IMG/VR virus record: IMGVR_UViG_3300043399_000877
Span: 248,001 to 312,000 of that record
Length of the DNA: 64,000 nucleotides
Reading direction: 5' to 3' (one strand)
Shown here: piece after piece, positions 136 to 41,768 of the stretch
How the letters are laid out: every line of letters begins with the position of its first letter
Position numbering within the stretch: the first letter of the stretch is position 1
Notes under the pieces: model-generated
Database searches by the model: none
The model's input: the letters and a program-made list of their open reading frames with translations, nothing else
What the model was told of the DNA's origin: nothing
Program-made: the position numbers and the translations under genes

Positions 136-192
136 ACCATATTTAATACCATAAAATAACACAGTCATAAATAAATGAAAAGGATTTTACAC

Positions 193-5479: not shown

Positions 5480-5489
5480 TGGATACACA

Positions 5490-6500: not shown

Positions 6501-6508
6501 TTAAAAAT

Positions 6509-7528: not shown

Positions 7529-7530
7529 AA

Positions 7531-8655: not shown

Positions 8656-9604
8656 ACTCTATAAGATAGAAACAGTAAACAATATTTTAGTAGTAGATTG
8701 GATATTATCCAATGTGTGTAACTACAAGTGTAGCTACTGCGGTCCCGACAGTAATGGTGGCGACCAGTATTGGCCGGATATTGAAAATTGCGAAATAGCA
8801 ATAAAGAAAATAACAGAGCAAAGCACTCACGATTACCGAATTTACACAATACTCGGCGGAGAACCAACCGTATGGAAAAATTTTACTAAATTAGCACAGA
8901 TAATAAAAGAAAACGACCCAAATAGTTTAGTAAACATTTTAACGAATGCCTCAAGAACTATAAATTGGTGGAATAGAACAAAGCCGTTTTTAGATAAAGT
9001 ATCAATAAGTTTTCATCACGAGAGTGCAAATGTAGACCACGTAATCGATGTGGTTAATAATATAAAAACCGATTGTCAAACAAACATACAATTGCTGATG
9101 GACATAAATCATTTTGATAAGTGTGTTGGAATTTTTGAAAAACTCAGAGACAACACCGACGTTCCAATTCAAATAAAAAAGTTACAGATTGAGTTTGGTA
9201 AGCATCAATGGATGCCATATACTGAAGATCAAAAAAAACTAATGATAGAATTGCATATGCAAACGTCCGGTAGACCAACCTCAAAAAGAAATAAGACAAG
9301 TTTGGGAATAAATTGTTTTTATGATGATGGTACAGTTGTGCGACAGGGAAACCATGAGTTGATACAGAAAGGTTTAAATAAATTTTATAACTGGAAGTGC
9401 AACATTGGGCAAGACTTGCTTGTGATAAAACCTAATGGAAATATAATACCAGCAAATGCCTGTAATAATCACATGGTGATAGGAAACATTAAGACAGACC
9501 CTGAAAACATCAAGTTGCTTACTGAAAGTGTTATTTGCAAATATAATGAATGCACTTGTGGTAGTGATATTGAAATAACAAAAATTGCACCCTCTATCAT
9601 ATAA
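8648..9604 (+). CDS. Radical SAM enzyme with C-terminal Cys cluster
   Basis: CNYKCSYC, LGGEPT, ISFH. C-terminal WKCNIG...C...CKYNECTC. Confidence 0.92.
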   Translation: MNKLYKIETVNNILVVDWILSNVCNYKCSYCGPDSNGGDQYWPDIENCEIAIKKITEQSTHDYRIYTILGGEPTVWKNFTKLAQIIKENDPNSLVNILTNASRTINWWNRTKPFLDKVSISFHHESANVDHVIDVVNNIKTDCQTNIQLLMDINHFDKCVGIFEKLRDNTDVPIQIKKLQIEFGKHQWMPYTEDQKKLMIELHMQTSGRPTSKRNKTSLGINCFYDDGTVVRQGNHELIQKGLNKFYNWKCNIGQDLLVIKPNGNIIPANACNNHMVIGNIKTDPENIKLLTESVICKYNECTCGSDIEITKIAPSII

Positions 9605-9638
9605 CAATATCTAAAAATAGCTAAACAATAAATATTGC

Positions 9639-12501: not shown

Positions 12502-13565
12502 TGCCGTTTTGTAGTGCTCTAACAAATCATATGTGTATTACAGTGGCGGCAAGTTGGCGCCCTTGTTGTCGTTTTAATAACTTTCCGTCTGTAGACATAA
12601 ATCAAGTTGATTTCAAGTCTTATCAGGAAAGCAGTTTTTATAAGTCTATTAAGACAGACATGGAATCTGGTTGGGCAGCTGGATGTAAAAAATGCAAAGA
12701 AGAAGAAGAGCGCGGTCAAACAAGTTTACGCGAAGTTTTGAATAAAACTTTATCAGGAAGCTCGGATATTGAATACATTGAAATTAGTTTAAGTAATAAA
12801 TGTAATCTTGCTTGTAAAATGTGCTCACCCACATACAGTACTTTTTGGAATAAGTTAGTATCTGACACACCATCGTTAACTGAATATTACAGTACAGTTA
12901 CGCAACCAAAAATCAGTGTAGAAAAGATTTTTTCATCTGTTGACTTGTCTAAGTTAAAAAAAATTAAATACCTTGGCGGAGAACCATTTATAACTCCAGA
13001 AATAAAAGAATTGTTTGATTTTTTAGAGGCAAAGGGAGTAATACAGAATATTGAATTTGAATGTAATACAAATTGTACGCTGTTCCCCACTAAATGGTTA
13101 ACCTACTTAGATAAATTTAAAAACGTAATAATAGAGTTGAGCATTGATGGTATTGGAACTGTTAACGATTATATTAGATACGGGAAAACTTGGGATGTTA
13201 TTGAAAAAAATATTGTAAAATGGTCCAAAACCAATTATAATGTAAGCATTTATAGCACTGTGCAGGCATATAATTTACATGATATGAAAAATGTTAAAGA
13301 ATTTGCAAGTAGTTTGTCATTAAAACATTATAGCAGCCTATTAGTGGTACCTGAGTTTCTAAGTGTACATGCCTTGCCGCCGGAATATTTAGAAATAGTT
13401 AAAGACGATTATAACCAAAAGTATTTTAAAAGTATAAAACACAACAACAGATTTTCTGAATTAACTAAATTTACAAAGACGATGGATATTTCCACCGGAT
13501 TGTATTTAAAAGATGTAATACCGTTATTACACACATTTATGGAGAATAAAAATGAGCCAACTTGA
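12501..13565 (+). CDS. Radical SAM enzyme with N-terminal twitch/SPASM-like cluster
   Basis: FC...PCC...CKKC, then CNLACKMC, LGGEPF, SIDG. Confidence 0.92.
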   Translation: MPFCSALTNHMCITVAASWRPCCRFNNFPSVDINQVDFKSYQESSFYKSIKTDMESGWAAGCKKCKEEEERGQTSLREVLNKTLSGSSDIEYIEISLSNKCNLACKMCSPTYSTFWNKLVSDTPSLTEYYSTVTQPKISVEKIFSSVDLSKLKKIKYLGGEPFITPEIKELFDFLEAKGVIQNIEFECNTNCTLFPTKWLTYLDKFKNVIIELSIDGIGTVNDYIRYGKTWDVIEKNIVKWSKTNYNVSIYSTVQAYNLHDMKNVKEFASSLSLKHYSSLLVVPEFLSVHALPPEYLEIVKDDYNQKYFKSIKHNNRFSELTKFTKTMDISTGLYLKDVIPLLHTFMENKNEPT

Positions 13566-14445
13566 CGAGCCCGGTTACTACCAGTTACCGATGGACCACC
13601 CAATCGCAATTGAAAATGTGCGCAGGCATTCAAGCAAAGCAGAGTGTGTTGAAAACATGTGGGATCAAACAGAACTTGAGTGGCTTTGGAAGAATGCATT
13701 TACGGCAGATTACAATGTTCCGAGATTGAATAGAAATGGAACAGTAATTATCGATGTTGACATGGGTAAAATATATCAACGTTACAAAGAAAAATTTGAT
13801 GAAGCGTTAGGCCCGCTTGCCGAAAAGACTCCGGTAATCGGAGGAAATTATTTTATCACACCACAGCAATATGGTTTGCATCAAGATGCAATGCGTGAAA
13901 AAGGCTACAAAAATATGCTACAGCACGTACCGTTAAATCATCCTCAACGAAAATACACAACTTGGAAGAACATTATTACCCCGCTGTGGATAGGTACTCA
14001 CCTTGACACTGTTGATGGTGGACAAATAGTTTTTTTTGAAGAACGCGATATAGGTTGGGCTAAAGTTTACAACGGTGGTGCTGAAACAAAAAACATTGCT
14101 AGTATATACGAGATTGTAACTGATTACAAACATCTACAATTTTACGACAGACATGGCAATCCAATGCCACCATCTGACGAGCCATTTGACAAAGATTTTT
14201 ATAATAAGTATATGAATACTCCCTATCGCAGGTTGCAAGGGTTAAATCCTGAAACAGTGTTTGATTGGGTCCCAGGTTCACCTTGTATTTTTGATGCAGT
14301 TCAATTACATGCAACAAACGAAGGCACAAAGGGTAGTGAACACAAAAAGACTTGGAATAGTAAAATGGGTCTTTTAATGACATTTATGATTGAATTGGAC
14401 GAAGACTTGTTAATAGAATGGCGCAAAGAACAGGAACAAATGTAA
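13552..14445 (+). CDS. 2OG-Fe(II) dioxygenase-like protein
   Basis: HxD (LHQD) and a distal His (FDAVQLH) with double-stranded beta-helix spacing. Confidence 0.6.
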   Translation: MSQLDEPGYYQLPMDHPIAIENVRRHSSKAECVENMWDQTELEWLWKNAFTADYNVPRLNRNGTVIIDVDMGKIYQRYKEKFDEALGPLAEKTPVIGGNYFITPQQYGLHQDAMREKGYKNMLQHVPLNHPQRKYTTWKNIITPLWIGTHLDTVDGGQIVFFEERDIGWAKVYNGGAETKNIASIYEIVTDYKHLQFYDRHGNPMPPSDEPFDKDFYNKYMNTPYRRLQGLNPETVFDWVPGSPCIFDAVQLHATNEGTKGSEHKKTWNSKMGLLMTFMIELDEDLLIEWRKEQEQM

Positions 14446-15051
14446 ATGATAATAAACGATGCAATGGAGATACCCGGGCAAACCGATGAGAAACAGCATC
14501 TCTGGTATCAAAAAATTATTGAGTGGTTCCATTATCCTCCTGCGGTGTTGGAAATAGGGTGTGCTTGGGGTAGAAGTTCATGGGCATGGTTGGATTGTAT
14601 GAACATGGATGGAAGTTATTTAGAAATTTTAGATAACTGGTCATATTCAAAAAATTTTAAACAACTTAACGGATTTAAACTATCTAATGAAACCTATTAT
14701 AAATTTATAAGTGATGTATCCCCCAATTACGATCAAAAAGAAATATTACTATATAATTTAAAGCAACATAAAAATTTTCAAAAAATTAAAAAAATTCATA
14801 CAGGCGTATATTCGGATGCATCAAAACATTATGATATTGTTTATTTAGACGATGATCATAGTCAAAAAAATGTATCAAATGAACTAGAGCATTTTAATGG
14901 TGTTCCAGTTATGTGTGGTGATGATTTTGAAAATACTCATCCAGGTGTTATAAAAGCAATTTGTAAATTTTATCACAATAATTTTAACAAATACAAGTTA
15001 TATATAGATCCTGATGCTAGGTTTTGGGCGTTAAAAAGAACGGACATGTAA
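14446..15051 (+). CDS. Class I SAM methyltransferase (Methyltransf_24-like)
   Basis: LEIGCAWGRSS, DIVYLDDDHS, MCGDDF. Confidence 0.8.
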   Translation: MIINDAMEIPGQTDEKQHLWYQKIIEWFHYPPAVLEIGCAWGRSSWAWLDCMNMDGSYLEILDNWSYSKNFKQLNGFKLSNETYYKFISDVSPNYDQKEILLYNLKQHKNFQKIKKIHTGVYSDASKHYDIVYLDDDHSQKNVSNELEHFNGVPVMCGDDFENTHPGVIKAICKFYHNNFNKYKLYIDPDARFWALKRTDM

Positions 15052-16208
15052 TGAGCAAAAATTTATATTGTAGTGAGCCTTACAAGCAAGTGCATTTTGA
15101 TAGCAGGGGGAATTTAGGTCCATGTTGTCAGTATGTGGGCAACCGTATGGATTTTAATACTTTAAATGAATACCTAGCAAGTGAGTGGTTGGATGATCTA
15201 AAAACCCGACTAAACTCTGGTGAAAAAGTAACCGGATGTAGTTTCTGCTGGAAACAAGAGAACGATGGCGCCAAAAGCATGCGTCAAAAACGTAACGAAT
15301 ATTACAAAAACAAACCCAATAATGGTATTGAACATATAATGATTACATATGGCAATCAATGCAACACTGCATGCCGCATATGTAATGCAAGTAGAAGCAG
15401 TTTAATTGAAAAACAATACAAAGAGATGAAAGATCATGTAACTGATCCGGATACTTTAAATTTAATAAGCAAAAAACATACTTGGAACAAAACAAAAACT
15501 TGGTACCGAAATATAAACAATGATATAATATCAATTGCAGATACTATTCGCAAAATTGAAATCAGTGGTGGTGAACCCTTCATAAACGTTCATTTTGATA
15601 GACTTATTGACGGTTTGATAGAATCTGGTAAAAAACTACCAGGACTTAATATTACAACTAACGGTAGTTTTACTGAAGACCAAATTGTTAAATTAGAAAA
15701 GTTTGACCACCTACATATAAATTTTAGTATTGATGGCGTGGGAAAAGAATTTTACGAGTATATAAGATGGCCGCTAAAATGGGACGACGTTCTTTCTAAA
15801 ATTGATATTTTAAAAAAATACCCCTGGATAACCTGTGAATTTGTTATAGTACCACATAATTTAAATTTATTAAATCTTACCGATAGCATTGTCTGGCTTA
15901 AAGAATATACTGAATATGACAGTAGATTCAAGATAGGATTCAGTTGGCTTAACGGCGCTCCGTGGTACAGTCTTGATAATAGTCCAAAATGGGCAAGAGA
16001 TAAAGTAATAGCAGAACTTGAAAGTGTTATACTTGTTGATTATACTGCTGATGAACAAGAACAAATATTAGAACTAATACATATTCTTAAAAATGCAAAC
16101 TCGCCAAAAAACTTGGAAATGTTTGTAAATCATATAGCACTTACCGACAAATATCGTGGGTGTGACACTTTTAAAACCTTGGGTTGGACTGTTGACGAGA
16201 TACAATAA
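15051..16208 (+). CDS. Radical SAM enzyme with N-terminal twitch/SPASM-like cluster
   Basis: YC...PCC...CSFC, then CNTACRIC, SGGEPF, TTNG, FSIDG. Confidence 0.92.
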   Translation: MSKNLYCSEPYKQVHFDSRGNLGPCCQYVGNRMDFNTLNEYLASEWLDDLKTRLNSGEKVTGCSFCWKQENDGAKSMRQKRNEYYKNKPNNGIEHIMITYGNQCNTACRICNASRSSLIEKQYKEMKDHVTDPDTLNLISKKHTWNKTKTWYRNINNDIISIADTIRKIEISGGEPFINVHFDRLIDGLIESGKKLPGLNITTNGSFTEDQIVKLEKFDHLHINFSIDGVGKEFYEYIRWPLKWDDVLSKIDILKKYPWITCEFVIVPHNLNLLNLTDSIVWLKEYTEYDSRFKIGFSWLNGAPWYSLDNSPKWARDKVIAELESVILVDYTADEQEQILELIHILKNANSPKNLEMFVNHIALTDKYRGCDTFKTLGWTVDEIQ

Positions 16209-16249
16209 TTTACTATTTTTAAAAATTAAATATAACAAAAAGGTGTATA

Positions 16250-17227
16250 ATGGACTGGAATGCTGTAGTAATTATTAGAACAAATGCTAAGTCTATTGCA
16301 GAATCTGTAACAAATGAAATAAAGAACGAGTTCCCATACAGAACTTCTGAATTTTATAAATGTACTAGAGATTTGGAATTTATATTGCAAGCATTGTCGA
16401 CATGCATACAATTAGACAATACGCAAGCTGTTGATGATGTAATACGCATGTTCTACAAAGGTGGCAAACTTAGGTTAAAGTCGATCGATGTTGAGTTAAT
16501 AGCATATGATAAACTTAAATTAAAACTTTTTGAGCTATTGTCTAAAAATGAAATAAAAGATTCTACTAAAGAAATTATTTCAAATTGCATTATTTTATTA
16601 AAAACTTCGCTGAACAGTGGGTATATTGGTGTCGAACAATCCTGGGAATATAGAAAAAATTATAAAATTTTTACATCAGACCCTGTGCCTAAATATTTAG
16701 AAAATGTGATAGATAATATATTGATACATTGTCCTATGCAGGATTCTAAAACCACAGAATTTGTAATATTAAAAACAACTTATGATGACATAAAGTTGCG
16801 AGAAAACTTAACAAAACATATTTTTAAAAATGATGCTAGTGGATTTCATGAAATAGCTCCCATAACTGCACCGTTGGTTTATTATTGCTGTAATAAAACC
16901 AATCCTGAATCTAATTCTTTTTTGAACATAGGTTTGCACGGCGGCGCAGCACTTGCAGAAATTAGAAATAATGGTTTTGATTTTAGTTTTATAGGCTGCA
17001 CATCTGATAATGTTTCTAACAAAACAGAGAAGGAACTTATTAAACGCATTCAATCTCGATTTAATTTAGATTTTGATATATGCTTGCCGTGCGTTGCGTT
17101 TTGCATCGGAAAAGCAAACAGGGAAGTTAATACTATCAATGTATACAAATGTAAAGATGGGACTGAATTAAGATATAGAACAACACTTGAACCATCGGTA
17201 ATAAAACCAAAGGTTCTTTTTACTTAA
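16250..17227 (+). CDS. Fusion of an N-terminal helical (KCxRD) domain and a nitroreductase-like domain
   Basis: KCTRDLEFIL in the N-terminal half. The C-terminal half has RKNYKIFTSDPVP...HCP, TAPLV, GFDFSFIGC and FCIGK, resembling the nitroreductase fold. Confidence 0.55.
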   Translation: MDWNAVVIIRTNAKSIAESVTNEIKNEFPYRTSEFYKCTRDLEFILQALSTCIQLDNTQAVDDVIRMFYKGGKLRLKSIDVELIAYDKLKLKLFELLSKNEIKDSTKEIISNCIILLKTSLNSGYIGVEQSWEYRKNYKIFTSDPVPKYLENVIDNILIHCPMQDSKTTEFVILKTTYDDIKLRENLTKHIFKNDASGFHEIAPITAPLVYYCCNKTNPESNSFLNIGLHGGAALAEIRNNGFDFSFIGCTSDNVSNKTEKELIKRIQSRFNLDFDICLPCVAFCIGKANREVNTINVYKCKDGTELRYRTTLEPSVIKPKVLFT

Positions 17228-18074
17228 TATTATTTTTTAAAAACCTTAGTAATGGCCTAACGCCCACTGGCCGGTCATCGAACGTTTTAGCCAAATGGAT
17301 TGCTTTTGTAGGTTTTAAATTAAAATCTTTTAAAACTTGCTGATATTCTTTTTCATAAGTCCTCCAAAAATATTCGGGACCAAAGTATTCCATAAATTTT
17401 ATGCCCATGCTTACGATAGCCTGACTATTCATATTAAAATCGTTCATTATAGTAATCGGGCCATTCTGGGTGCCCCTTGCAAATCTTAGGCCAATTCTGT
17501 TTCCGCCCAGTCCGCCCTTGCTGAGGCTTATGCAAAACGTATCTATTGCTGGGTGTGAAAAATCAAATTCTATATCTCGTATACAACTTATCCACGCTCC
17601 GTCAATGTGTACTTTTATCCCTAAATTATGACAGGCGTCCAATATTTCTTTCATTTGAGGGTGAATATCACCAAAGAACGGAAATGGCATAGCTATTAGT
17701 AGTTCTTTATTTGGGTCCAATGTTTCAACGGTTGTATACACAATGTTGGGATTTAACCTCCAATGATATTTGTAATCATTTTCAAATATCATCAAGTTGC
17801 CTTTTCGTTGATATAAATCGTCTATGTATTGAGTACATCCCTGTGTAATGTCGAGACGACTAAATTTATCTAAACCCGAAAACGTGCTGTATTTGTGGTC
17901 TTTAATCCATTTTACAAAATTTTCTTTAAATATCTCATCTAAATTACTAGTATGTATTGGATTTTCTACATAAAATTTATCATAAAATTTGTTTATGTTA
18001 GAGTCGTACATTGGTTGTGGACGATCATACTGCAACCATTCTTCTGTGTATTGTCTATGTGTGCTGTCTCTCAT
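17220..18074 (-). CDS. PLP-dependent fold-type I enzyme (aminotransferase-like)
   Basis: VHIDGAW (PLP-binding DxA) and SLSKG...NRIG (Schiff-base Lys). It is the only inverted gene inside the + strand island. Confidence 0.75.
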   Translation of the reverse strand: MRDSTHRQYTEEWLQYDRPQPMYDSNINKFYDKFYVENPIHTSNLDEIFKENFVKWIKDHKYSTFSGLDKFSRLDITQGCTQYIDDLYQRKGNLMIFENDYKYHWRLNPNIVYTTVETLDPNKELLIAMPFPFFGDIHPQMKEILDACHNLGIKVHIDGAWISCIRDIEFDFSHPAIDTFCISLSKGGLGGNRIGLRFARGTQNGPITIMNDFNMNSQAIVSMGIKFMEYFGPEYFWRTYEKEYQQVLKDFNLKPTKAIHLAKTFDDRPVGVRPLLRFLKNNIK

Positions 18075-18086
18075 ATAAATATTTAT
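18074..18086. promoter_or_regulatory. Back-to-back ATAAATA late-promoter-like motifs (palindrome ATAAATATTTAT)
   Basis: TATAAATA on + (18074-18081) and ATAAATA on - (18080-18086) lie between divergent genes. The T4 late consensus is TATAAATA. Confidence 0.55.
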
Positions 18087-18131
18087 GTGTACTTTATAAT
18101 GCAAATAATAATGTGATTTTCGGAGAAATTA

Positions 18132-19229
18132 ATGAAAAAAAAGCCATTTTGCTATGCTCCATGGGTTTCTGTAAGATATCGGAATACGACAGATAATAGA
18201 GTGTCACCATGTTGCCAATGGAACGATGAACACTTTACAGGTAACATAACAGAATATTATAATTCTAAATTTTTAAAAAATGTAAAATCAAATATGATTA
18301 AACATAACATGAATGAAATATCCAAAACATGTATAGAATGTATAAATGCAGAAAAACATAATGTTGAATCCTCACGAGAATATTACAATAATGCTGTGCG
18401 CATGGGAACGTTTGTTCCTGGACAACTTAACAAACTAGATCTTAGACCAGATACTCTATGCAATTTAAAGTGCATTATGTGCAGTCCAAAAAGTTCTAGT
18501 TTAATTGAAGAAGAGTTAATAAAACACGAAAATTTTCAACCATTTGAGTACTCTGATACAACTGACGTTGTCGACTTAGATCTATCAAATTTAAAAGCTT
18601 TAAAATTAGTTGGTGGTGAGCCTACAATAAGTAAAAAAATGTTTTACATCATGGATCATTTAATAGAAAAAGATATCGCAAAAAATATAAGCATTGAATA
18701 TATAACAAATTGCACAAGTGTTAATAAAAAATGGTTATCTCGTGTTGAACAATTTAAAAAACATATGGTTACAATGTCAGTAGACGCAACTGGTAAGTGT
18801 TTTGAGTACATTCGTCATGGTACTTCATGGGAACTAGTTGAAAGAAATATATTAAAGTTAACGGAAATAGCAGACGATTATGATTTTAATATAGTTGCAC
18901 AAGCAACAAACTTTGCAGTAATTGAAGATTGGTTTGAATATTTTATTCAATATGACATTCAGCATATCAGAATGTCGCATTTTTACGGAGATTATCCATT
19001 GGGCCTTAATGTTATACCTGATTACCTAAAACAAGAAAAAATAAATTATCTTGAAAAATTTGATCATCCACTTGCAACTCAGGCAATCACTTATCTTAAA
19101 AATTCTAAGTTTAGTAAAAAAACATTTGACTTATTTTGGAAAAATACTGAAATACGCGACAAAAGAAGAAATGTAAGCATTTTTGATGTGAGTCCGGTAT
19201 TTGAAAAAATGAAAAATAGTCACATGTAA
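18132..19229 (+). CDS. Radical SAM enzyme with N-terminal twitch/SPASM-like cluster
   Basis: FCYAPW...PCC...CIEC, then CNLKCIMC, GGEPT, SVDA. Confidence 0.92.
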   Translation: MKKKPFCYAPWVSVRYRNTTDNRVSPCCQWNDEHFTGNITEYYNSKFLKNVKSNMIKHNMNEISKTCIECINAEKHNVESSREYYNNAVRMGTFVPGQLNKLDLRPDTLCNLKCIMCSPKSSSLIEEELIKHENFQPFEYSDTTDVVDLDLSNLKALKLVGGEPTISKKMFYIMDHLIEKDIAKNISIEYITNCTSVNKKWLSRVEQFKKHMVTMSVDATGKCFEYIRHGTSWELVERNILKLTEIADDYDFNIVAQATNFAVIEDWFEYFIQYDIQHIRMSHFYGDYPLGLNVIPDYLKQEKINYLEKFDHPLATQAITYLKNSKFSKKTFDLFWKNTEIRDKRRNVSIFDVSPVFEKMKNSHM

Positions 19230-19276: not shown

Positions 19277-20008
19277 ATGGATAACAAGTTCTTTATACCT
19301 GACAATGTAACAGGTATAGTTATAAAATTGTCAGGTGGTGCTGACAGTTCTATACTATATTATGGGTTATGTAAACACATAGTTGAGAACAATTTAAGTA
19401 TACCTATATATGTAACATCTATGGACACAAATAGAAAACCTTGGTACAGCCATTATGCAAAAAAAGTCATAAATTTTACAAAACAAGAAACTGGAATATC
19501 ACCCGTAGAGCATAGAATTCATTTCTTAGACGGCAACTGGACTATGGATGATTATGTACAAACTCAACATGATTTAATGATGTCAGTTATTGATGACAAA
19601 CTTGCAAATGTGGCGTATAGCGGGTTAACTCAAAATCCAACTAGAAAAGATTTACACAGAACTCGAAAACATAAAGATTTTAACAAAAACGGTTTAAAAT
19701 ATCTTGATGAAAATCTAAACGGAACAGATTCTAGTAGAAATGATCATTCAAATAAAAAAGTAGTAAATTACAACGGGCACTTCATAATGATCAATCCGTT
19801 TATACACAAAACAAAAAAAGAAGTATTTAACTGGTATAAACATTATAATGTACTAGATACTCTTTTTCCATTAACTTATAGTTGTGAAGAATCAGATAAT
19901 GAATACAAGAAGTTAATTAAAGTTGAAGACGGGTTTGCAGAAATGTCGCACTGTGGATTTTGTTGGTTTTGCATGGAACGTATATACGCATTTGGAAGAC
20001 TCGTATGA
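19277..20008 (+). CDS. QueC-like PP-loop ATPase
   Basis: KLSGGADS PP-loop, NPF..TK, TYSC...HCGFCWFCMER Zn site. Confidence 0.8.
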   Translation: MDNKFFIPDNVTGIVIKLSGGADSSILYYGLCKHIVENNLSIPIYVTSMDTNRKPWYSHYAKKVINFTKQETGISPVEHRIHFLDGNWTMDDYVQTQHDLMMSVIDDKLANVAYSGLTQNPTRKDLHRTRKHKDFNKNGLKYLDENLNGTDSSRNDHSNKKVVNYNGHFIMINPFIHKTKKEVFNWYKHYNVLDTLFPLTYSCEESDNEYKKLIKVEDGFAEMSHCGFCWFCMERIYAFGRLV

Positions 20009-21228
20009 CACCATGTATTTTGCCTTGGATAAATTTTAGTACTAATACATTTGGTAGACCAAGAACTTGCGGTTATGCCGATCAAGCTGTAGTCAAAAGA
20101 GCACAAGTTAAATTAAAAGGCAGTAGTATAGAAGACGAATGGAATAACGATTATTTTAAAAAGATACGCAGAGACTTTTTACAAGGCGAGTGGCCTGAAA
20201 ATTGCAAACGATGTGAGTACGTGGAACAACTAAATGGTTCCAGTAAGCGTATAGAAGAAAACAAATATCATTATGAGTCAAATAAACATTTAATTGATTC
20301 TACAGCGCCAGACGGTAGCGTCCCATATTATCCGCCCAATATTGATATTAGAGTGGGTACAATATGTAATTTAAAGTGCATTCATTGCGGAACTGGTGCA
20401 AGCAGCAAGTGGAATGAAGACAAATCCTTATTAAATAAATACCCAAATACTGAATTTTATAACATTGACAACAAATGGATAGAACAAGATAGCTTTATTT
20501 GGGATAACATAAAAGAAAACTTGAGTAGTACCCGTAAGTTTAATTTCTTAGGAGGCGAACCGTTTGCAAATAAGCAACATAACCGGTTTATTAAAGAAGT
20601 ATGTGACACTGATGCTGCTAAAGAAATAACACTGACATATGTGAGCAACGGAACACTGTTAACAGACACCATTTTTCAGCAACTTGTGAAATTTAAAGAA
20701 GTCATTATCAGACTAAGTTTAGATGCTATCGGAATTCCGGGAGAATATTTTAGATTTCCGATATCATGGAAAACATTTAAAACAAAACTAGAATTAATGC
20801 AAAAATATGCAAACAATAATCCGCATGTTGACATTGGGGTCCAGTGGACTTGTAGCAATATAAGCATGTTCTATCTAGTTGAAACATATGATTTTATAAA
20901 ACAGCATTATCCTAATATTAAGTTTATTTTTGCGAATCATGTTGAGTGGCCAATTCATATGAGTGCGCAAGTTTTGCCGCATGAATTAAAAAAAATAACT
21001 CAAGATAAAATTGAGTCATATAATTTTGAAAATAACTCCCAGTACGTTCCATTTTATATAAGCCATATGTGCGAAAAAGATTTATGGGGTACTCACGGAA
21101 ATACATTTATGAATTATTTAGATGACCTAGACGCAGCCAGAAAAATAAGTTGGAAAGACAGTTTTAAAGAAATGGAATTACAGAAATATGATCCCAGATG
21201 CAACAACCATATGAATGAAATGAAATAA
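20005..21228 (+). CDS. Radical SAM enzyme with N-terminal twitch/SPASM-like cluster
   Basis: PCILPW...TC...CKRC, then CNLKCIHC, LGGEPF, SNGT, SLDA. Confidence 0.92.
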   Translation: MTPCILPWINFSTNTFGRPRTCGYADQAVVKRAQVKLKGSSIEDEWNNDYFKKIRRDFLQGEWPENCKRCEYVEQLNGSSKRIEENKYHYESNKHLIDSTAPDGSVPYYPPNIDIRVGTICNLKCIHCGTGASSKWNEDKSLLNKYPNTEFYNIDNKWIEQDSFIWDNIKENLSSTRKFNFLGGEPFANKQHNRFIKEVCDTDAAKEITLTYVSNGTLLTDTIFQQLVKFKEVIIRLSLDAIGIPGEYFRFPISWKTFKTKLELMQKYANNNPHVDIGVQWTCSNISMFYLVETYDFIKQHYPNIKFIFANHVEWPIHMSAQVLPHELKKITQDKIESYNFENNSQYVPFYISHMCEKDLWGTHGNTFMNYLDDLDAARKISWKDSFKEMELQKYDPRCNNHMNEMK

Positions 21229-21270
21229 AATAAATGTTTGTGTAATCTGGCGAGTTGGTATATATATAAT

Positions 21271-22395
21271 ATGAAAATTAATATGTCTGAAGATTTAAAA
21301 TGGAGTGAATATGATTTTACAAAAATCCCATTTGACGATATCGTACAAGTAGGTCAAAGAACTCTTTTGTATCGAGATCTTTTTACCGTTAGTTGGTTGC
21401 TTGGTCGCTTTTGCAATTACCGGTGTAGCTATTGTTGGCCATATGCAAGATCAAATACAAAAGATCATCGACCAACCGACCTATGCCTCAAAACAATTGA
21501 TGAGATCAAACGACAAGCTAGAGAAAACGGATTCAATAGTTTCCATTTCAGTCTCTCAGGAGGAGAACCAACGTTTCATCCCGGATACCTCGAGATATTA
21601 AAGTATCTTGCCGACGACACTCCGAATACAAATTATACTAGCATACACATGACCAGTAATTGTAGTAGAAATATGGCATGGTTTGAGCAATATGTTGAAT
21701 ATGCAAAACCATTTCATAGAGCAAGTATCACAGCTAGTTTACACACCGAGCATGTAAACACTCCTGAGCGAATGCAAGAATTCGCAGACAAGTTGATTTT
21801 TTGTCAAGAACATGACGTCCAGGTCACTATTAACATGGTAATGGTACCTGAGTGGTTTGAGCGTGATTGGGAAAATGCTCTATTTTTTCATGAGCAAGGC
21901 ATAAATGTAACGCTAAAACCACAAAGTGATCCCACTGCCAGTCGAGTAGTAGATGGGTATTCACAAGACATGCTTAATCGTTTATGGAACGGTATGCCAC
22001 AGCGGGCGTATACTGAAAGTAAAAGAAAATGGGCTAGTCGCCCTCAACCCAAGTTTGTAGTGCCAGTAGTTAATGGTGTTGACGACAAATCTGTACCTGC
22101 ACATATGCAGATTGAATTTGTAGACAAAAACGGAAAAAAATGGTATATGGACCAAGCAGAGCGGTTCAACGCATTTGGATTTAACAAGTTTAAAGGTTGG
22201 AGTTGCAACAGTGGTTATCAGGGAATAATCATACGCGAGCCCGACGGGAGTATAAAAAGATCATACAGTTGCCACGATGTTCCACTTGGCAATATAGAGA
22301 CTGGATTTAAATTGTTTAAATCCCCCATGCCGTGTACTACTGAAAGCTGTGTGAGTAGTGCGGATAGTAAAATACCAAAACAAAGGAAGGATTAA
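21271..22395 (+). CDS. Radical SAM enzyme with C-terminal Cys cluster (same subtype as 8648-9604)
   Basis: CNYRCSYC, SGGEPT, ASLH. C-terminal WSCNSG...SC...CTTESC. Confidence 0.92.
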   Translation: MKINMSEDLKWSEYDFTKIPFDDIVQVGQRTLLYRDLFTVSWLLGRFCNYRCSYCWPYARSNTKDHRPTDLCLKTIDEIKRQARENGFNSFHFSLSGGEPTFHPGYLEILKYLADDTPNTNYTSIHMTSNCSRNMAWFEQYVEYAKPFHRASITASLHTEHVNTPERMQEFADKLIFCQEHDVQVTINMVMVPEWFERDWENALFFHEQGINVTLKPQSDPTASRVVDGYSQDMLNRLWNGMPQRAYTESKRKWASRPQPKFVVPVVNGVDDKSVPAHMQIEFVDKNGKKWYMDQAERFNAFGFNKFKGWSCNSGYQGIIIREPDGSIKRSYSCHDVPLGNIETGFKLFKSPMPCTTESCVSSADSKIPKQRKD

Positions 22396-22399
22396 AAAC

Positions 22400-23464
22400 A
22401 TGCCAATATGTAAAGCACTCTATAACCAAGTATGTGTTGAAATCGGTGGAGTTTATAAACCATGCTGTTCATATGTTGGGGACAGTGGTATATCAGTAAA
22501 CGACATGACCCCAAATGAATTTTTAAAATCTGATTATATAGAAAATATAAGAAAAAACATGGAAGGGGATTTATGGGATTCCGGTTGCGTTGGATGCAAA
22601 GTGCGTAGTGAATCTGGGCTCCACACGTTGAAAGATACCTATGACTTTTATTGTAAATCTGATATAGGTACTTTTGAAATGATTGAAATTTCAGTAAGTA
22701 ACAAGTGTAATAACCAATGCAGAATGTGCGATTCTAGGCACAGTAGTTTATGGCAAAATACTTTGGGTTTTGGTAATTCTCCTAAATCTTATTATGATTT
22801 GCAAGCATTAATGAATAATCTAGACGGCAGTGATATAAAGGTAATAAAATATTTAGGTGGTGAACCATTAATAACTGATGAAATAAATCAAGTCTTCGAT
22901 TTTATCAAAAAAAATAAAGAAAATAAAATTTCATTTTATTTTAATACTAACCTATCAGTACCTCCAGAAAAATATCTTAGCGAATTTGAAAATATAGAAA
23001 AATTTGTGATTGGGTATAGCATTGACGGTGTAGGCGCAACTAATGAATATATAAGAGATGGAAGCAATTGGGACACTGTTGTTAGGAATTTAGATAAATG
23101 GGAAAAATTCTTTGAATCCAGATCCGATCAGAGTGAAAGATACGTCCACACCGTATTACAAGCATACAACTATCATGATATTGAAAATATATATAAGTTT
23201 AGTAGTTCGTATGGGTTAGAGCATTTTACACCTCCTATAATTGCGCCACATGAGTTTACATTAAATGCATTGCCTAAAGAGTATATAGAAAAGTATGCCA
23301 CCAGTAGAACGGCAAAATATGTTGATAACCATTCATATAATGCATCGTTGTACGATAAATTAGTAAAAACAACAATTTATCATGATAAGTTATTTCAAAA
23401 ATCAATAAATAATTTTATACCTGAATTGTATTTTTTAAGTAAGAGCAATAATGATACACCATGA
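22400..23464 (+). CDS. Radical SAM enzyme with N-terminal twitch/SPASM-like cluster
   Basis: IC...PCC...CVGC, then CNNQCRMC, LGGEPL, SIDG. Confidence 0.92.
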   Translation: MPICKALYNQVCVEIGGVYKPCCSYVGDSGISVNDMTPNEFLKSDYIENIRKNMEGDLWDSGCVGCKVRSESGLHTLKDTYDFYCKSDIGTFEMIEISVSNKCNNQCRMCDSRHSSLWQNTLGFGNSPKSYYDLQALMNNLDGSDIKVIKYLGGEPLITDEINQVFDFIKKNKENKISFYFNTNLSVPPEKYLSEFENIEKFVIGYSIDGVGATNEYIRDGSNWDTVVRNLDKWEKFFESRSDQSERYVHTVLQAYNYHDIENIYKFSSSYGLEHFTPPIIAPHEFTLNALPKEYIEKYATSRTAKYVDNHSYNASLYDKLVKTTIYHDKLFQKSINNFIPELYFLSKSNNDTP

Positions 23465-24104
23465 AATATACGAAGGAATAAACTTTAATATATACGACGG
23501 TACGTTGGGTGTTAGTGTAAGTGGTGGCGCAGATAGTGCGCTGGTATTATTCTTTTTATTAAAATTTAATAAAAGAAAAATTCATATATTTACATTTGCA
23601 GATCAGCAAAAACACATGATAAACACTAAATCAGCAATTGATGTGGTAAACACCTGCATACAGCTAACTGGCAATAGTAATTTAGAACATCACATAGATT
23701 ATGGTGAAATAAAAGACATAGATACACTATTTAGAAATCATGATTTGTACTTGCAAAATGGAATAGTAGATTATGTGTATACGGGAATAACAAAAAACCC
23801 ACCAAAAGAAGTGACAGACACTTTTTCAGAGCCAGTGCCGGTAACTATACCACGTGATCCAACTGTGGTACGTGATGTACTATGGGATAATACGTGGTAC
23901 AGACCTTGGACAAATTTAAATAAACGTGATTTATACAATATATACAAACAGCATAACTTGTTAGACACGTTGTTTCCAAAAACAAGGAGTTGTGAATTTT
24001 ACAGTACTGATGTTCAAGAAATGGAAGAATTTATAAAAACTCACAAACAGTGTGGAACTTGTTGGTGGTGTGAAGAACGCAAATGGGGATTTGGAAAAAT
24101 ATAA
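23451..24104 (+). CDS. QueC-like PP-loop ATPase (second copy)
   Basis: SVSGGADS, TRSC...QCGTCWWCEER. Confidence 0.8.
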   Translation: MIHHEIYEGINFNIYDGTLGVSVSGGADSALVLFFLLKFNKRKIHIFTFADQQKHMINTKSAIDVVNTCIQLTGNSNLEHHIDYGEIKDIDTLFRNHDLYLQNGIVDYVYTGITKNPPKEVTDTFSEPVPVTIPRDPTVVRDVLWDNTWYRPWTNLNKRDLYNIYKQHNLLDTLFPKTRSCEFYSTDVQEMEEFIKTHKQCGTCWWCEERKWGFGKI

Positions 24105-24947
24105 ATGACAGTTAAACCTTTTTTTATAAGTTTGCCTAGATCGAGATCTACAATACTTTATGACAGGATGGAAGGATATGCGCTTACAAAGTTGGGGATG
24201 TCTAGGATAGTTGGGCATCCTGAATTCTTTTTAGAATTTTCTCACACTGACATGTATTTTAACACAAAAACACAGCGGTATGATGACTTAGAATTATACC
24301 CTATTCCTAATGATAATAGAATTGATATGCATTTTATATATCCACATGTATTCAATAATTCTATTGATAGAATACGACATAAAATGAATGTGCTCAAACA
24401 TGAAAAAGACAACGGTAGAGATTACTACTTCAAGGGTACTATGAATATTTTTGATAGTTATCAAGAAATAATTGATTTTTTTGCTGACAGAAAAATTATA
24501 ATTACCAGAAGGCATGATATAGTTGAAATGGCAATATCATATCTTTATGCAAGAAATGTAAAGTTGTTCCACGCAAAAGGTAACAATTATGACTATTATA
24601 CTTCTGTACTGGCAAAGGGAACAGAGATTAATGAATCTGAATTAGAAGATATGCCCGAATACATAAAGTATTTGACATTTGTTGATAACGTTGAACATTA
24701 CATAAAAGATAAAAATTACAATTATTGTGTTACATACTATGAAGATATGGAAACTGATGACATGATAAACTCAAAGATAGATGAAATATACGAAACAACT
24801 GAATGGCGAAATAGCGTAAAAACAACGGAGGCATCTACACCTATAAAGGTTGAAAAAAAATATTCAAATGTAATTAAGAATTATACAGACGTTAGATCAC
24901 ATTTAGAAAATATAGTTAAGGAAATAAGAAGTGAAAAACTTTTATGA
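24105..24947 (+). CDS. Sulfotransferase-like protein (PAPS-dependent, Stf0-like)
   Basis: N-terminal SLPRSRST resembles the PRSGST 5'-PSB loop. Also R...S (TRRHDIVEMAIS) and YED. Confidence 0.6.
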   Translation: MTVKPFFISLPRSRSTILYDRMEGYALTKLGMSRIVGHPEFFLEFSHTDMYFNTKTQRYDDLELYPIPNDNRIDMHFIYPHVFNNSIDRIRHKMNVLKHEKDNGRDYYFKGTMNIFDSYQEIIDFFADRKIIITRRHDIVEMAISYLYARNVKLFHAKGNNYDYYTSVLAKGTEINESELEDMPEYIKYLTFVDNVEHYIKDKNYNYCVTYYEDMETDDMINSKIDEIYETTEWRNSVKTTEASTPIKVEKKYSNVIKNYTDVRSHLENIVKEIRSEKLL

Positions 24948-25515
24948 AATTAATGACTTGCCCATTTTGGATTTAACAAGTGAGTACGACAACCTAATAA
25001 AAGAAGGTAGAATATGGTATTCTGAAAGAGAACCAAATCAAATATGTTTAAATTCAACAATCAATAAACTTAATGATATGCATTACGGTGCTGGCAGCTT
25101 GGTGTTTGATTGGGACTTGGTTGGAACACTTGACGATTCGGGAAACGTCATAACGTCGCCGACGTTAAGAGAAACTCCATTAGAGGAAAGTGATTTTACA
25201 GAATTATGCTCTCAGTTTAAAGGAACGTTATTCGAGGATGCATATGTTGCATTACAAAAAAAATACAATCTTGGTAGAGTAAGGATAATGCGATCAAAAC
25301 CTAAAACTTGTTTATCTTGGCATTACGACTATGATGTCAGAGTACATTATCCATTAAAAACGTATGAGGGGTGTTTGATGGTTATAGAAGATGAAGTTTG
25401 CCACCTTACTGCTAATAAATGGTGGTATACAGAAACTCAAAAAATGCATACTGCATTCAACGCAAGTGCCCAGGAGAGAATACATTTAGTAGCTACAGTC
25501 ATTTCTAGTAAGTGA
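24931..25515 (+). CDS. Aspartyl/asparaginyl beta-hydroxylase-like 2OG-Fe(II) oxygenase
   Basis: RVRIM, WHYD, RVHYPL, HTAFN, RIHLV. Confidence 0.8.
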   Translation: MKNFYEINDLPILDLTSEYDNLIKEGRIWYSEREPNQICLNSTINKLNDMHYGAGSLVFDWDLVGTLDDSGNVITSPTLRETPLEESDFTELCSQFKGTLFEDAYVALQKKYNLGRVRIMRSKPKTCLSWHYDYDVRVHYPLKTYEGCLMVIEDEVCHLTANKWWYTETQKMHTAFNASAQERIHLVATVISSK

Positions 25516-31202: not shown

Positions 31203-31242
31203 GTTGGGTGGGTGTTTATAGCCCACCCTTCATAGATATTTA

Positions 31243-32737: not shown

Positions 32738-32754
32738 CTCTCCATCTTCCTAAC

Positions 32755-41735: not shown

Positions 41736-41768
41736 GTTGTCTCCGAGCTTGTTATTTAGAAAAGAAAA

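What the first reader, a model, noticed from the sequence alone, without database searches (positions are those of the whole stretch)
19277..24104. Two divergent QueC-like enzymes lie in the radical SAM island while the deazaguanine block lacks queC
Seen: two short SGGADS proteins with SC...CGxCWxCxER Zn sites, each adjacent to radical SAM genes and over 15 kb from folE and queE. Known: QueC adenylates the CDG carboxylate on the way to the amide and nitrile. Inference: they either supply the missing step, possibly using a polyamine or amino sugar instead of ammonia and so linking the three loci, or they are repurposed amide/nitrile synthases for the island's product.
Basis: partly seen in the sequence, partly recalled or inferred. 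Interest (0 to 1): 0.6.

Follow-up and report, generated by a model that had tools for sequence, protein, structure and literature searches.

The report
Virus-specific QueC-like enzymes in radical-SAM island
Two real but very divergent relatives of the queuosine enzyme QueC sit inside a 14-gene radical-SAM island of a 382-kb phage; they belong to a large, unstudied, almost purely viral enzyme family that most likely serves the island's unknown product, and they are unlikely to fill a gap in the phage's deazaguanine pathway, which is of a type that needs no QueC.

Summary
Window 19277-20008 (243 aa, subfamily A) and 23451-24104 (217 aa, subfamily B) encode PP-loop proteins with SGGADS and an SCE…HCGxCW[FW]CxER four-Cys site. 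Each is stop/start-coupled to radical-SAM genes. They lie about 16 kb from queE and 17 kb from folE. No canonical queC exists in the complete 381,886-bp phage genome.

The "missing step" reading is not supported.
- Both proteins lack the residues shown to be essential in E. coli QueC (Y35, R99, Y131, Y189).
- They score 19 and 27 bits against a 150-bit QueC cutoff.
- They form their own clade apart from QueC and QatC.
- The deazaguanine block carries a DpdL homologue with the LxxxHRHxF signature. It is therefore the QueC-less FolE/QueD/QueE/DpdL type linked to 7-deazaguanine DNA in phage phiST. The same module occurs in 27 isolated phages, none of which has these proteins.

The family is large: more than 270 protein clusters, 281 IMG/VR contigs, and 5 hits in 185,579 cellular genomes. 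About half of its immediate neighbours are radical-SAM genes.

Best reading: ATP-dependent carboxylate-adenylating amide-forming enzymes of the island's pathway, substrate unknown. A CDG-conjugating role like Cap9 or QatC is not excluded.

The parts
19277..20008 (+). QueC-like PP-loop protein, subfamily A (P0155, 243 aa): SGGADS loop, K180, SCE...HCGFCWFCMER four-Cys site
   Evidence: AF2 model pLDDT 90. Best PDB matches: Cap9 9nto Z 14.2, QueC 3bl5 Z 13.6, QatC 9y02 Z 12.3.
23451..24104 (+). QueC-like PP-loop protein, subfamily B (P0002, 217 aa): SGGADS, LTGN..HH, TKNPP, PWTNLNK, RSCE...QCGTCWWCEER
   Evidence: AF2 model pLDDT 93.5. Best PDB matches: QueC 3bl5 Z 13.2, Cap9 Z 12.4, LarE Z 12.3.
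18132..19229 (+). Radical-SAM gene upstream of A (N-terminal twitch type, NF033640 222 bits, cutoff 170)
19960..21228 (+). Radical-SAM gene downstream of A. The likely start is the ATG at 20005, overlapping A's stop (ATGA). NF033640 297 bits.
21238..22395 (+). Radical-SAM gene, the best-conserved island member (56-73% identity in related islands)
22358..23464 (+). Radical-SAM gene (NF033640 195 bits) whose end overlaps the start of B by 14 nt
24105..24947 (+). 280-aa protein of unknown family. Its start directly follows B's stop. Conserved in the closest relatives (L011, L012).
24931..25515 (+). Asp/Arg beta-hydroxylase-type cupin (PF05118). The same kind of gene follows B in L007-L010, L011-L012, L014 and L018.
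175..18104 (.). Rest of the island inside the window: UDP-sugar dehydrogenase-like gene (175-1419); 674-aa repeat protein with a GT-A-like C-terminal module (1346-3370); Rossmann methyltransferase-like gene (3351-4199); nine further radical-SAM genes (4403, 5439, 6509, 7531, 8648, 9639, 11032 B12-type, 12501, 15024); ORFs without a family match at 13552-14445 and 16250-17227, and a weak SdgA-glycosyltransferase-like ORF at 14446-15051; aminotransferase-like ORF on the minus strand (17220-18104). One more radical-SAM gene lies about 5 kb before the window, at genome 241188-242723.
39893..40765 (-). QueE-like CDG synthase (phrog_2076, E 1e-51). Not part of the island; belongs to the separate deazaguanine block.
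41049..41780 (-). GTP cyclohydrolase I (FolE)
42630..43202 (-). Phosphoribosyltransferase, homologous to the one beside queE in Synechococcus phage BUCT-ZZ01 and to the phiST PRTase
46298..46720 (-). DpdL homologue (proposed CDG decarboxylase) with LEVDHRHMF, which fits LxxxHRHxF. Its presence explains why no queC is needed.
   Evidence: Criteria from bioRxiv 10.1101/2023.04.13.536721, section 15.

Best explanation
The two genes encode paralogous members (subfamilies A and B) of a distinct, almost exclusively viral clade of the QueC branch of PP-loop ATP pyrophosphatases. They keep the ATP-binding SGGxDS loop, the conserved lysine (E. coli K165 position) and a four-cysteine QueC-type metal site. 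The QueC substrate pocket is replaced by their own invariant motifs: G[LI]TxNP, RxP / DxSR, P[FW]xxxDK, [YR]SCE and HCGxCW[FW]CxER.

They are co-transcribed and translationally coupled with twitch-type radical-SAM enzymes. The most likely mechanism is adenylation of a carboxylate on the island's own intermediate, followed by transfer to ammonia or another amine. That would be one or two amide-forming (or further-dehydrating) tailoring steps in a multi-step pathway built from radical-SAM enzymes, a methyltransferase-like protein, an aminotransferase-like protein, a cupin hydroxylase and glycosyltransferase-like proteins.

They are not the phage's QueC. The FolE/QueD/QueE/PRTase/DpdL block is a self-sufficient QueC-independent module of the type associated with 7-deazaguanine DNA.

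Shown here: fold, motifs, clade, gene coupling, distribution, presence of DpdL. Inferred: adenylation/amidation chemistry. Unknown: the substrate. Sugar-nucleotide genes in and beside the island make a uronic-acid or other sugar carboxylate one candidate, and a peptide or protein carboxylate is another.
For: Fold and homology:
- AF2 models have pLDDT 93.5 and 90.
- The top PDB neighbours are QueC, Cap9 and QatC at Z 12-14.
- hhalign against a canonical QueC alignment gives 97.5% probability, E about 6e-12.

Distinct clade:
- In an IQ-TREE of 132 sequences, canonical QueC is a clade (SH-aLRT 96) and QatC-like proteins are a clade (99).
- A, B, the MAG members and the RsoM2USA protein group together (89, or 95 without RsoM2USA).
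- The A and B profiles match each other at E 3e-41.

Active site:
- SGGxDS, K165 and the four Cys are retained.
- Y35, R99, Y131 and Y189 are replaced or deleted in all 23 rows of the A/B clade aligned (10 A, 10 B... 20 A/B sequences plus the window's own two among them, and RsoM2USA_134).

Coupling to radical-SAM genes:
- Junctions overlap.
- 65 of 80 IMG/VR loci have at least one radical-SAM ORF within 10 kb (median 5).
- 15 loci carry both A and B.
- The immediate same-strand neighbour of B is a radical-SAM gene in 37 of 75 cases downstream and 36 of 76 upstream.
- The same island architecture is seen in marine 235-kb and 92-kb contigs and in two MAG contigs.

Independence from the deazaguanine block:
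- DpdL with its signature motif is present.
- The DpdL module occurs in 27 isolates, and none of them has A or B.
- RsoM2USA has a distant member but no QueE.
- In the complete 518-kb relative G002, the island and QueE/DpdL are about 93 kb apart.
- All five cellular genomes that carry an island copy also have a full-length canonical-type QueC match (130-181 bits; two of the five above the 150.3-bit cutoff) elsewhere.
- One viral fragment (G025) has both a B member and a canonical QueC of 167 bits.
Against: - No biochemical data exist for any member, and the substrate is not identified.
- The characterised members with the C...CxxCxxC ribbon that were met in this work (QueC, Gat-QueC, Cap9, QatC) all act on CDG. 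QatC does so despite having lost the canonical motifs (PMC13329287). Motif loss alone therefore does not exclude CDG.
- The window's own lineage always carries FolE/QueE/DpdL where the contigs are long enough: 11-12 of the 25 largest related records, including both complete genomes. A supply of CDG is thus at hand.
- The four Cys could hold an Fe-S cluster rather than Zn. LarE scores as well as QueC for the B model, so sulfur transfer is a live alternative.
Confidence: 0.55

Rival explanations
1. CDG ligases of the Cap9/QatC kind. The enzymes adenylate 7-carboxy-7-deazaguanine made by the phage's FolE/QueD/QueE and attach it through an amide bond to an amine. The acceptor could be a protein N-terminus, a polyamine, an amino sugar or the radical-SAM island's scaffold.
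For: - The closest solved structures include Cap9 (Z 14.2 for A) and QatC (Z 12.3, 20-22% identity).
- The position of QueC's Y189 is Glu (SCE). Cap9's motif is also reported as CE(x)6CxxCxxC (PMC13329287).
- The phage lineage makes CDG and lacks QueC.
- Polyamine-type genes lie next to the island at 25516-31226.
Against: - Cap9 keeps the YxQ, RN and YxDC motifs and QatC has its own motif set. A and B have neither.
- PADLOC Cap9 and QatC models give only 10-20 bits, against 58 bits for E. coli QueC on the Cap9 model.
- NCBIfam QatC gives 22 bits against a 280-bit cutoff.
- No CD-NTase, QatA, QatB or QatD-like neighbour was seen in the Pfam scans of the region.
- The CDG block has its own consumer, DpdL, and exists without A or B in 27 isolates.
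- A family member exists in a phage without QueE.
- The island and the CDG genes are 16 to 93 kb apart and never interleaved.
Confidence: 0.17
2. Functional QueC or ADG synthase. One or both proteins convert CDG to the amide or nitrile, restoring a preQ0 or ADG route for DNA or tRNA modification.
For: - QueC-type fold, PP-loop and Cys4 site.
- Some database sources label homologues as 7-cyano-7-deazaguanine synthase.
- No canonical queC in the genome.
Against: - The four residues whose alanine mutants abolish E. coli QueC function are absent (PMC13329287).
- TIGR00364 gives 19 and 27 bits against a 150.3-bit cutoff.
- phmmer with the phage 9g Gat-QueC finds neither protein at E below 10.
- They form a separate clade.
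- They are not next to queD or queE.
- DpdL is present.
- Canonical-type QueC co-exists with family members in five MAGs and one viral contig.
Confidence: 0.05
3. Not an amide synthase. The proteins would be PP-loop sulfurtransferases or other adenylate-forming enzymes of the LarE/TtuA/ThiI kind. The Cys cluster would bind Fe-S, and the product would be a thiocarboxylate, a thioamide or a thiolated intermediate of the island's pathway.
For: - LarE chains tie with QueC for the B model (Z 12.3 against 13.2). TtuA and NcsA score Z 10-11.6.
- The genes sit among 14 Fe-S enzymes.
Against: - The Cys spacing and the flanking residues (SC...CGxCxxCxxR) match the QueC Zn ribbon, and the C-terminal region is what aligns to QueC profiles.
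- LarE-type members are reported to lack this motif (PMC13329287).
- No sulfur-carrier or cysteine desulfurase gene was seen nearby.
Confidence: 0.15

Closest known systems
QueC, 7-cyano-7-deazaguanine synthase (TIGR00364; PF06508 cluster 1; PDB 3BL5, 2PG3)
   Same: Size of about 220-240 aa, PP-loop SGGxDS, conserved Lys (K165), C-terminal SC...CGxCxxCxxR four-Cys ribbon, overall fold (Z 13-14).
   Different: Lacks YxQxHxxE, VPxRN, YPDC and Y189. Scores 19-27 bits against a 150-bit cutoff. Forms a separate clade. Sits among radical-SAM genes and not with queD/queE. Almost only viral.
Cap9 (type IV CBASS QueC-like CDG-protein ligase; PDB 9NTO; PADLOC PDLC00911)
   Same: Best structural match for subfamily A (Z 14.2). 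Compact single-domain QueC fold. 'CE' at the first Zn cysteine.
   Different: Cap9 retains the QueC pocket motifs, and A and B do not. Model score is 10-20 bits. No CD-NTase or Cap10 neighbour.
QatC (QatABCD defence, NF041925 / PDLC02214; PDB 9Y01/9Y02)
   Same: A QueC-fold enzyme that has remodelled the pocket while keeping the P-loop and Cys site. 20-22% identity over about 180 aligned residues with the A model.
   Different: QatC is about 400 aa with N- and C-terminal extensions and its own motif set. NCBIfam score is 22 against a 280-bit cutoff. It forms a separate clade (SH-aLRT 99). No QatA, QatB or QatD context here.
WbpG/PseA-type N-acetyl-sugar amidotransferases (PF06508 cluster 5 in PMC13329287)
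   Same: QueC-superfamily PP-loop enzymes with a Cys-rich metal site that work on sugar intermediates of glycan pathways. This is a precedent for a non-deazaguanine substrate in a sugar-gene context.
   Different: They are reported to be 300-400 aa with the motifs in a different order. No sequences of this group were compared here.
phiST-type QueC-less deazaguanine module (FolE, QueD, QueE, DpdL; Cui et al. 2023 preprint)
   Same: The window's block has FolE, QueE, a PRTase and a DpdL with the LxxxHRHxF signature, and QueD lies elsewhere in the genome. There is no QueC.
   Different: No DpdA of the 9g (DpdA1), phiST (DpdA3) or ACP17-gp123 type could be detected in this genome. The DpdL function itself is only proposed in the source.

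Membership tests
Canonical QueC (TIGR00364 / PF06508 cluster 1) | SGGxDS ATP-binding loop | tested here: met
   SGGADS in both proteins and in all 20 A/B sequences aligned.
Canonical QueC (TIGR00364 / PF06508 cluster 1) | C-terminal C(x)nCxxCxxC zinc motif | tested here: met
   SCE...HCGxCW[FW]C, with four invariant Cys. Metal identity was not tested.
Canonical QueC (TIGR00364 / PF06508 cluster 1) | YxQxHxxE motif (Y35 essential) | tested here: not met
   The aligned positions read TNRKPWYA in A and DQQKHMIA in B. No Tyr is present at position 35 in any of the 20 A/B sequences, whereas QueC of E. coli, phage 9g and G025 have YGQ/YGC.
Canonical QueC (TIGR00364 / PF06508 cluster 1) | VPxRN motif (R99 essential) | tested here: not met
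   Subfamily A has xxxQ[HDE] and subfamily B has a deletion.
Canonical QueC (TIGR00364 / PF06508 cluster 1) | YPDC motif (Y131 essential) and Y189 | tested here: not met
   The YPDC region is replaced by G[LI]TxNP plus variable residues. Position 189 is Glu in all A/B members.
Canonical QueC (TIGR00364 / PF06508 cluster 1) | HMM score above the curated cutoff | tested here: not met
   TIGR00364 gives 19.4 and 27.2 bits against a 150.3-bit cutoff. For Pfam QueC, P0001 scores 21 bits (below the 22-bit cutoff) and P0002 scores 32 bits, with no single stretch passing in either.
Canonical QueC (TIGR00364 / PF06508 cluster 1) | Gene linkage with queD/queE | tested here: not met
   queE is 15.8 kb away on the other strand. 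queD is at genome 340 kb. The immediate neighbours are radical-SAM island genes.
Canonical QueC (TIGR00364 / PF06508 cluster 1) | Converts CDG to preQ0; complements a queC deletion | not testable with these tools
   Needs a bench assay.
Cap9 (type IV CBASS) | Match to the Cap9 model, retention of QueC pocket motifs, CD-NTase/Cap10 neighbours | tested here: not met
   PDLC00911 gives 20.5 and 9.6 bits, against 58 bits for E. coli QueC. The pocket motifs are absent. No CD-NTase or TGT family appears in the Pfam scans of the neighbours. No Cap9 sequence could be placed in the tree.
QatC (QatABCD) | Match to the QatC model, about 400 aa with extensions, QatA/B/D neighbours | tested here: not met
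   NF041925 gives 22 bits against a 280-bit cutoff and PDLC02214 gives 20 bits. The proteins are 217 and 243 aa. They form a separate clade. No such neighbours are present.
PP-loop ATP pyrophosphatase superfamily, QueC-like branch | Rossmann-like alpha/beta fold with an N-terminal SGGxDS loop, plus a QueC-type C-terminal Cys ribbon | tested here: met
   AF2 models with pLDDT 90-93.5. Z 12-14 to QueC, Cap9 and QatC over 158-180 residues. hhalign 97.5% to a QueC alignment.
DpdL (proposed CDG decarboxylase), for window 46298-46720 | Homology to phiST CGPG_00067 and the LxxxHRHxF motif in place of QueD's CxxxHGH | tested here: met
   phmmer E 8.8e-16 to phiST DpdL and 6e-18 to the ACP17 homologue. 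The motif reads LEVDHRHMF.
DpdA (DNA deazaguanine transglycosylase), anywhere in the genome | TGT-like protein | tested here: inconclusive
   No hit with phage 9g DpdA, phiST DpdA3, phrog_20335, phrog_19058 or the ACP17 gp123 family. The PF01702 search also misses the known 9g DpdA, so that negative result means nothing.

The most novel reading that the evidence does not exclude
The A/B clade is a third, virus-borne repurposing of the QueC scaffold, after Cap9 and QatC. In this reading a jumbo-phage lineage uses two QueC-fold ligases inside a 14-enzyme radical-SAM assembly line to build a heavily tailored molecule, which could be a glycan, a nucleotide or a peptide. The molecule might carry a deazaguanine-derived or other amide-linked unit made from phage-supplied CDG. 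Such a molecule would be unlike any known phage product.
Probability: 0.15. Interest if true: 0.8.

Novelty: new variant of a known kind. Interest (0 to 1): 0.55.

Why it matters
The QueC fold was recently shown to have been re-used twice for protein deazaguanylation in anti-phage defence. This work finds a third large branch that sits on the virus side, has its own conserved pocket, and is not among the ten clusters described in the 2026 PF06508 survey.

The branch is welded to one of the densest radical-SAM gene arrays seen in a phage: 14 genes in about 32 kb. That array recurs in hundreds of marine and freshwater jumbo-phage contigs and makes an unknown product. Finding the substrate of these two small, easily expressed enzymes is probably the most tractable way into that pathway.

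The work also corrects an annotation trap. Automatic pipelines call these proteins '7-cyano-7-deazaguanine synthase', which would wrongly predict preQ0 or archaeosine-type DNA. The phage's deazaguanine genes point instead to the DpdL (7-deazaguanine) type.

Tried and rejected
- **blastn against isolates.** blastn of the region against 50,697 phage records found no match.
- **Sequence search of the PDB.** phmmer against PDB sequences with either protein found nothing at E up to 1.
- **A conserved trio with RsoM2USA.** The 674-aa and 279-aa proteins flanking the RsoM2USA homologue have the same sizes as window genes but are not homologous. Rejected.
- **A precursor peptide.** The only sizeable gap (4200-4402) holds a 56-aa ORF, but it has no conserved counterpart in any fetched locus. 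There is no support for a RiPP precursor there.
- **A third family member.** The 422-aa PP-loop protein (26849-28117) fell inside the A/B clade in the tree on a 3.4-substitution branch. hhalign shows that only the P-loop region aligns, at 9-26% probability. This is a long-branch artefact.
- **Cap9 sequences for the tree.** A search of 401 genomes with the PADLOC model returned two hits that carry the YGQRH motif, so they are ordinary QueC. Cap9 is therefore represented only by structure and HMM score.
- **DpdA.** PF01702 gave no hit, but it also fails on the phage 9g positive control. phiST DpdA3 PHROGs, 9g DpdA and the ACP17 gp123 family also gave no hit. ACP17 gp124 and window 44856-45932 were considered as a DpdA, but this is rejected: they are not TGT-like and look like a GT-B glycosyltransferase.
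- **Literature.** Searches for a description of this island or family found none.
- **Length limit of the word search.** The word-index homologue search sees only proteins of 0.55-1.75 times the query length. Fused or much longer relatives of A and B were therefore not surveyed.

Full report
**Setting.** The window is bases 248001-312000 of a single 381,886-bp virus record that CheckV rates 100% complete. It is therefore a jumbo phage. The left 25.5 kb of the window is one tightly packed plus-strand gene array at about 33% GC. The right part is at about 40% GC.

**Observation.** Both proteins are there.
- ORF A runs from the ATG at 19277 to 20008. The database holds exactly this 243-aa product, P0155. 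The mechanical ORF begins at a TTG at 19265.
- ORF B is 23451-24104, 217 aa.
- Each has SGGADS near the N-terminus and an SCE…HCGxCW[FW]CxER block at the C-terminus.
- They are 29% identical, and their family profiles align end to end (hhalign 100%, E 3e-41).
- A's stop overlaps the ATG of the next radical-SAM gene (ATGA at 20005-20008).
- B's start overlaps the end of the preceding radical-SAM gene by 14 nt, and B's stop is followed at once by the next ATG.
- queE-like (39893-40765) and folE (41049-41780) lie on the other strand, 15.8 and 16.9 kb away.
- A PF06508 search of the whole genome finds nothing above the cutoff. The best matches are these two ORFs, a TilS-like ORF and a 422-aa PP-loop ORF.
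- queD is present but far away, at genome 340,140-340,715.

**What the proteins are.**
- Pfam QueC is hit only weakly (21 and 32 bits).
- NCBIfam QueC gives 19 and 27 bits against a cutoff of 150, and QatC gives 22 against 280.
- The PADLOC Cap9 and QatC models give 10-20 bits, while E. coli QueC scores 58 bits on the Cap9 model.
- AlphaFold models built on family alignments are confident (pLDDT 93.5 and 90).
- For B, the best solved neighbours are B. subtilis QueC (Z 13.2, 165 residues, rmsd 3.2), Cap9 (12.4) and LarE (12.3).
- For A, they are Cap9 (14.2), QueC (13.6, 13.1), TilS/MesJ (12.6) and QatC (12.3).
- hhalign against an alignment of eight canonical QueCs gives 97.5% probability for both families.

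So they are true but remote members of the QueC branch of PP-loop ATP pyrophosphatases.

**Test against the QueC signature.** Libby et al. 2026 (PMC13329287) define the canonical signature as SGGxDS, YxQxHxxE, VPxRN, YPDC, K165 and the Cys ribbon. They show that Y35A, R99A, Y131A and Y189A abolish function in E. coli. I aligned ten A and ten B sequences and the RsoM2USA homologue with QueC from E. coli, phage 9g and a related viral contig.
- SGGxDS, K165 and the four Cys are kept.
- Position 35 is never Tyr.
- The VPxRN arginine is Gln in A and deleted in B.
- YPDC is replaced by G[LI]TxNP plus variable residues.
- Position 189 is Glu.

The families have their own invariant columns instead. 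The same paper notes that Cap9 keeps the QueC pocket, while QatC rebuilt it yet is still proposed to use CDG. Loss of the motifs rules out 'ordinary QueC', but it does not by itself rule out CDG as a substrate.

**Phylogeny.** I built an IQ-TREE tree of 132 sequences. It held 72 A (71 homologues plus the window's own) and 41 B (40 plus the window's own), eight QueC, three QatC or QatC-like proteins, five MAG members, the RsoM2USA protein and two PP-loop outgroups from this genome.
- QueC is one clade (SH-aLRT 96).
- QatC-like proteins are one clade (99).
- Everything A/B-like forms a third group (89, or 95 without RsoM2USA). Within it, the main body of A (71 of 72 rows) and the main body of B (42 rows, including one MAG member) are each supported at 96.
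- The branches are long and Cap9 is missing, so only the separation from QueC and QatC should be taken from this tree.

**Distribution.**
- B has at least 200 and A has 73 cluster representatives in the 5.8-billion-protein index.
- 281 IMG/VR contigs encode a B relative.
- ESM-Atlas clusters of the family are 97-100% viral.
- Among 50,697 isolate phage records, only Ralstonia phage RsoM2USA has a match, at 26% identity and annotated as hypothetical. A has none.
- Among 185,579 cellular species genomes there are five hits. Four are Bdellovibrionota MAGs and one is a Verrucomicrobiales MAG. One of them lies on a 936-kb contig.

**Context.** The association with radical-SAM genes is the family's most constant feature.
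- The 235-kb and 92-kb marine contigs show the same layout as the window.
- Of 80 IMG/VR loci, 65 have radical-SAM ORFs within 10 kb (median 5) and 15 carry both A and B.
- The gene immediately downstream of B is radical-SAM in 37 of 75 cases, and the gene immediately upstream in 36 of 76.
- The MAG copies on L099, L101 and L103 are embedded in the same kind of island.

In this genome there are 14 island-type radical-SAM genes between genome 241,188 and 271,464. Of the ten window radical-SAM proteins scanned against NCBIfam, five pass the model NF033640 (N-terminal twitch-domain radical SAM) and one is B12-dependent.

Other recurring island genes are:
- a UDP-sugar dehydrogenase-like protein;
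- a 674-920-aa protein made of repeated modules whose last copy resembles a GT-A glycosyltransferase (a lead only);
- a Rossmann methyltransferase-like protein;
- an aminotransferase-like protein;
- Asp/Arg-hydroxylase cupins after B.

I could not identify the product. Sugar-nucleotide genes argue for a glycan or nucleotide-sugar. SPASM/twitch enzymes and the cupin would also fit a peptide or protein.

**Why queC is absent.** The ORF at 46298-46720(-) is homologous to CGPG_00067 of Cellulophaga phage phiST (phmmer E 9e-16), to its ACP17 counterpart (6e-18) and, at 62% identity, to a gene of Synechococcus phage BUCT-ZZ01. It carries LEVDHRHMF. This is the LxxxHRHxF signature by which Cui et al. 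(bioRxiv 10.1101/2023.04.13.536721) separate DpdL, their proposed CDG decarboxylase, from QueD. In that work, phiST, phi13:1 and phi19:2 encode FolE, QueD and QueE but no QueC, and their DNA carries 2'-deoxy-7-deazaguanine.
- The window's block also contains a phosphoribosyltransferase next to folE, as in BUCT-ZZ01 and phiST.
- DpdL homologues occur in 27 isolate phages, none of which has an A or B protein.
- Among the 25 largest relatives of this phage, the ten records with DpdL are among those with full-length QueE.
- In the one other complete genome (G002, 518 kb), the island and the QueE/DpdL genes are about 93 kb apart.

The deazaguanine block is therefore a complete module of a known QueC-less kind. 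The caveat is that DpdL's activity is proposed and has not been demonstrated.

**Further dissociation.**
- RsoM2USA, which has a distant family member, has no QueE.
- All five MAGs with an island copy have a full-length canonical-type QueC match (130-181 bits; two above the 150.3-bit cutoff) elsewhere.
- One viral fragment (G025) holds both a B member and a 167-bit QueC.
- No canonical QueC was found in 43 further related fragments, but these are only 3-19% complete.

**Mechanism.** Retention of the P-loop, the lysine and the metal ribbon supports ATP-dependent adenylation of a substrate carboxylate, followed by attack of ammonia or an amine. This is the common chemistry of QueC, Cap9 and QatC. 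That step is inferred, not shown. There is no fused or adjacent glutaminase. Two non-redundant paralogues in one island suggest two such steps, or two substrates. I put 0.55 on 'island-dedicated amide-forming enzymes, not CDG-related', 0.17 on a Cap9/QatC-like CDG ligase, 0.15 on a sulfurtransferase or other PP-loop chemistry, and 0.05 on a true QueC.

**Verdict.** The 'supplies the missing step / links three loci' interpretation is not supported, and the 'repurposed for the island' interpretation is favoured. The family is an undescribed, virus-specific variant of the QueC scaffold. It is not among the ten PF06508 clusters described by Libby et al., has no PHROG of its own (only partial hits to phrog_1550), and has no literature that I could find.

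Noticed in passing
window 39893-46720 (-), plus genome 340140-340715: The deazaguanine block is FolE, QueE, PRTase and DpdL, with QueD elsewhere in the genome. No DpdA of any tested type is detectable. A phosphoribosyltransferase sits beside folE/queE here and in cyanophage BUCT-ZZ01, and phiST also encodes one. The abstract of PMC6112128 reports a PRTase (TubE) that uses CDG in tubercidin synthesis. A nucleotide-level, pre-replicative route to deazaguanine DNA might therefore deserve a look.
   Followed up: partly
window 44856-45932 (-): A 358-aa GT-B-like glycosyltransferase lies next to DpdL. It is homologous to ACP17 gp124 (E 4e-43) and to the BUCT-ZZ01 gene that also flanks DpdL. This is a conserved DpdL-glycosyltransferase pair of unknown meaning. 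It is not TGT-like.
   Followed up: partly
window 25516-31226 (-): A minus-strand cluster abuts the island: saccharopine-dehydrogenase-like gene, a 422-aa PP-loop protein without a Cys ribbon (P0230), an AMP-binding adenylating enzyme, a 189-aa ORF and an Orn/DAP-decarboxylase-like gene. It looks like polyamine or amino-acid conjugate chemistry. In the 92-kb relative (L011) only the first, second and fourth of these are present.
   Followed up: partly
window 1346-3370 (+): A 674-aa protein built from about five degenerate copies of one module (…TEMFW…F.F.Y…H.F…Y.G.FL…). The last copy has a DGD motif and resembles GT-A glycosyltransferases. Relatives of 230-920 aa head most related islands. The family is 95-100% viral in the ESM Atlas and has no Pfam model.
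   Followed up: partly
genome 241188-271464 (window up to 23464): There are 14 paralogous radical-SAM genes in about 32 kb. Of the ten scanned against NCBIfam, five pass NF033640 (N-terminal twitch domain) and one is B12-dependent. This is an unusually dense array for any genome.
   Followed up: partly
L101 (Bdellovibrionia MAG, 936-kb contig) and L103 (Verrucomicrobiales MAG): The same QueC-like plus radical-SAM island occurs in a few cellular assemblies, once on a contig far too long to be a phage. This suggests either a prophage or a cellular origin or use of the island.
   Followed up: no
window 30000-36000: GC content rises from about 0.33 (island side) to about 0.40-0.43, with a local peak of 0.49 at 34-36 kb over the DUF2201/VWA and MoxR-type AAA genes. 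The island may be compositionally foreign to the rest of the genome.
   Followed up: no
window 4200-4402: This is the only sizeable intergenic gap of the island (203 nt). It holds a 56-aa ORF with no conserved counterpart in any fetched locus. It is more likely a promoter region between two transcription units.
   Followed up: yes
method note: The genome-search route with Pfam PF01702 does not detect the experimentally known DpdA of phage 9g. Absence of a PF01702 hit in a phage says nothing about DpdA.
   Followed up: yes
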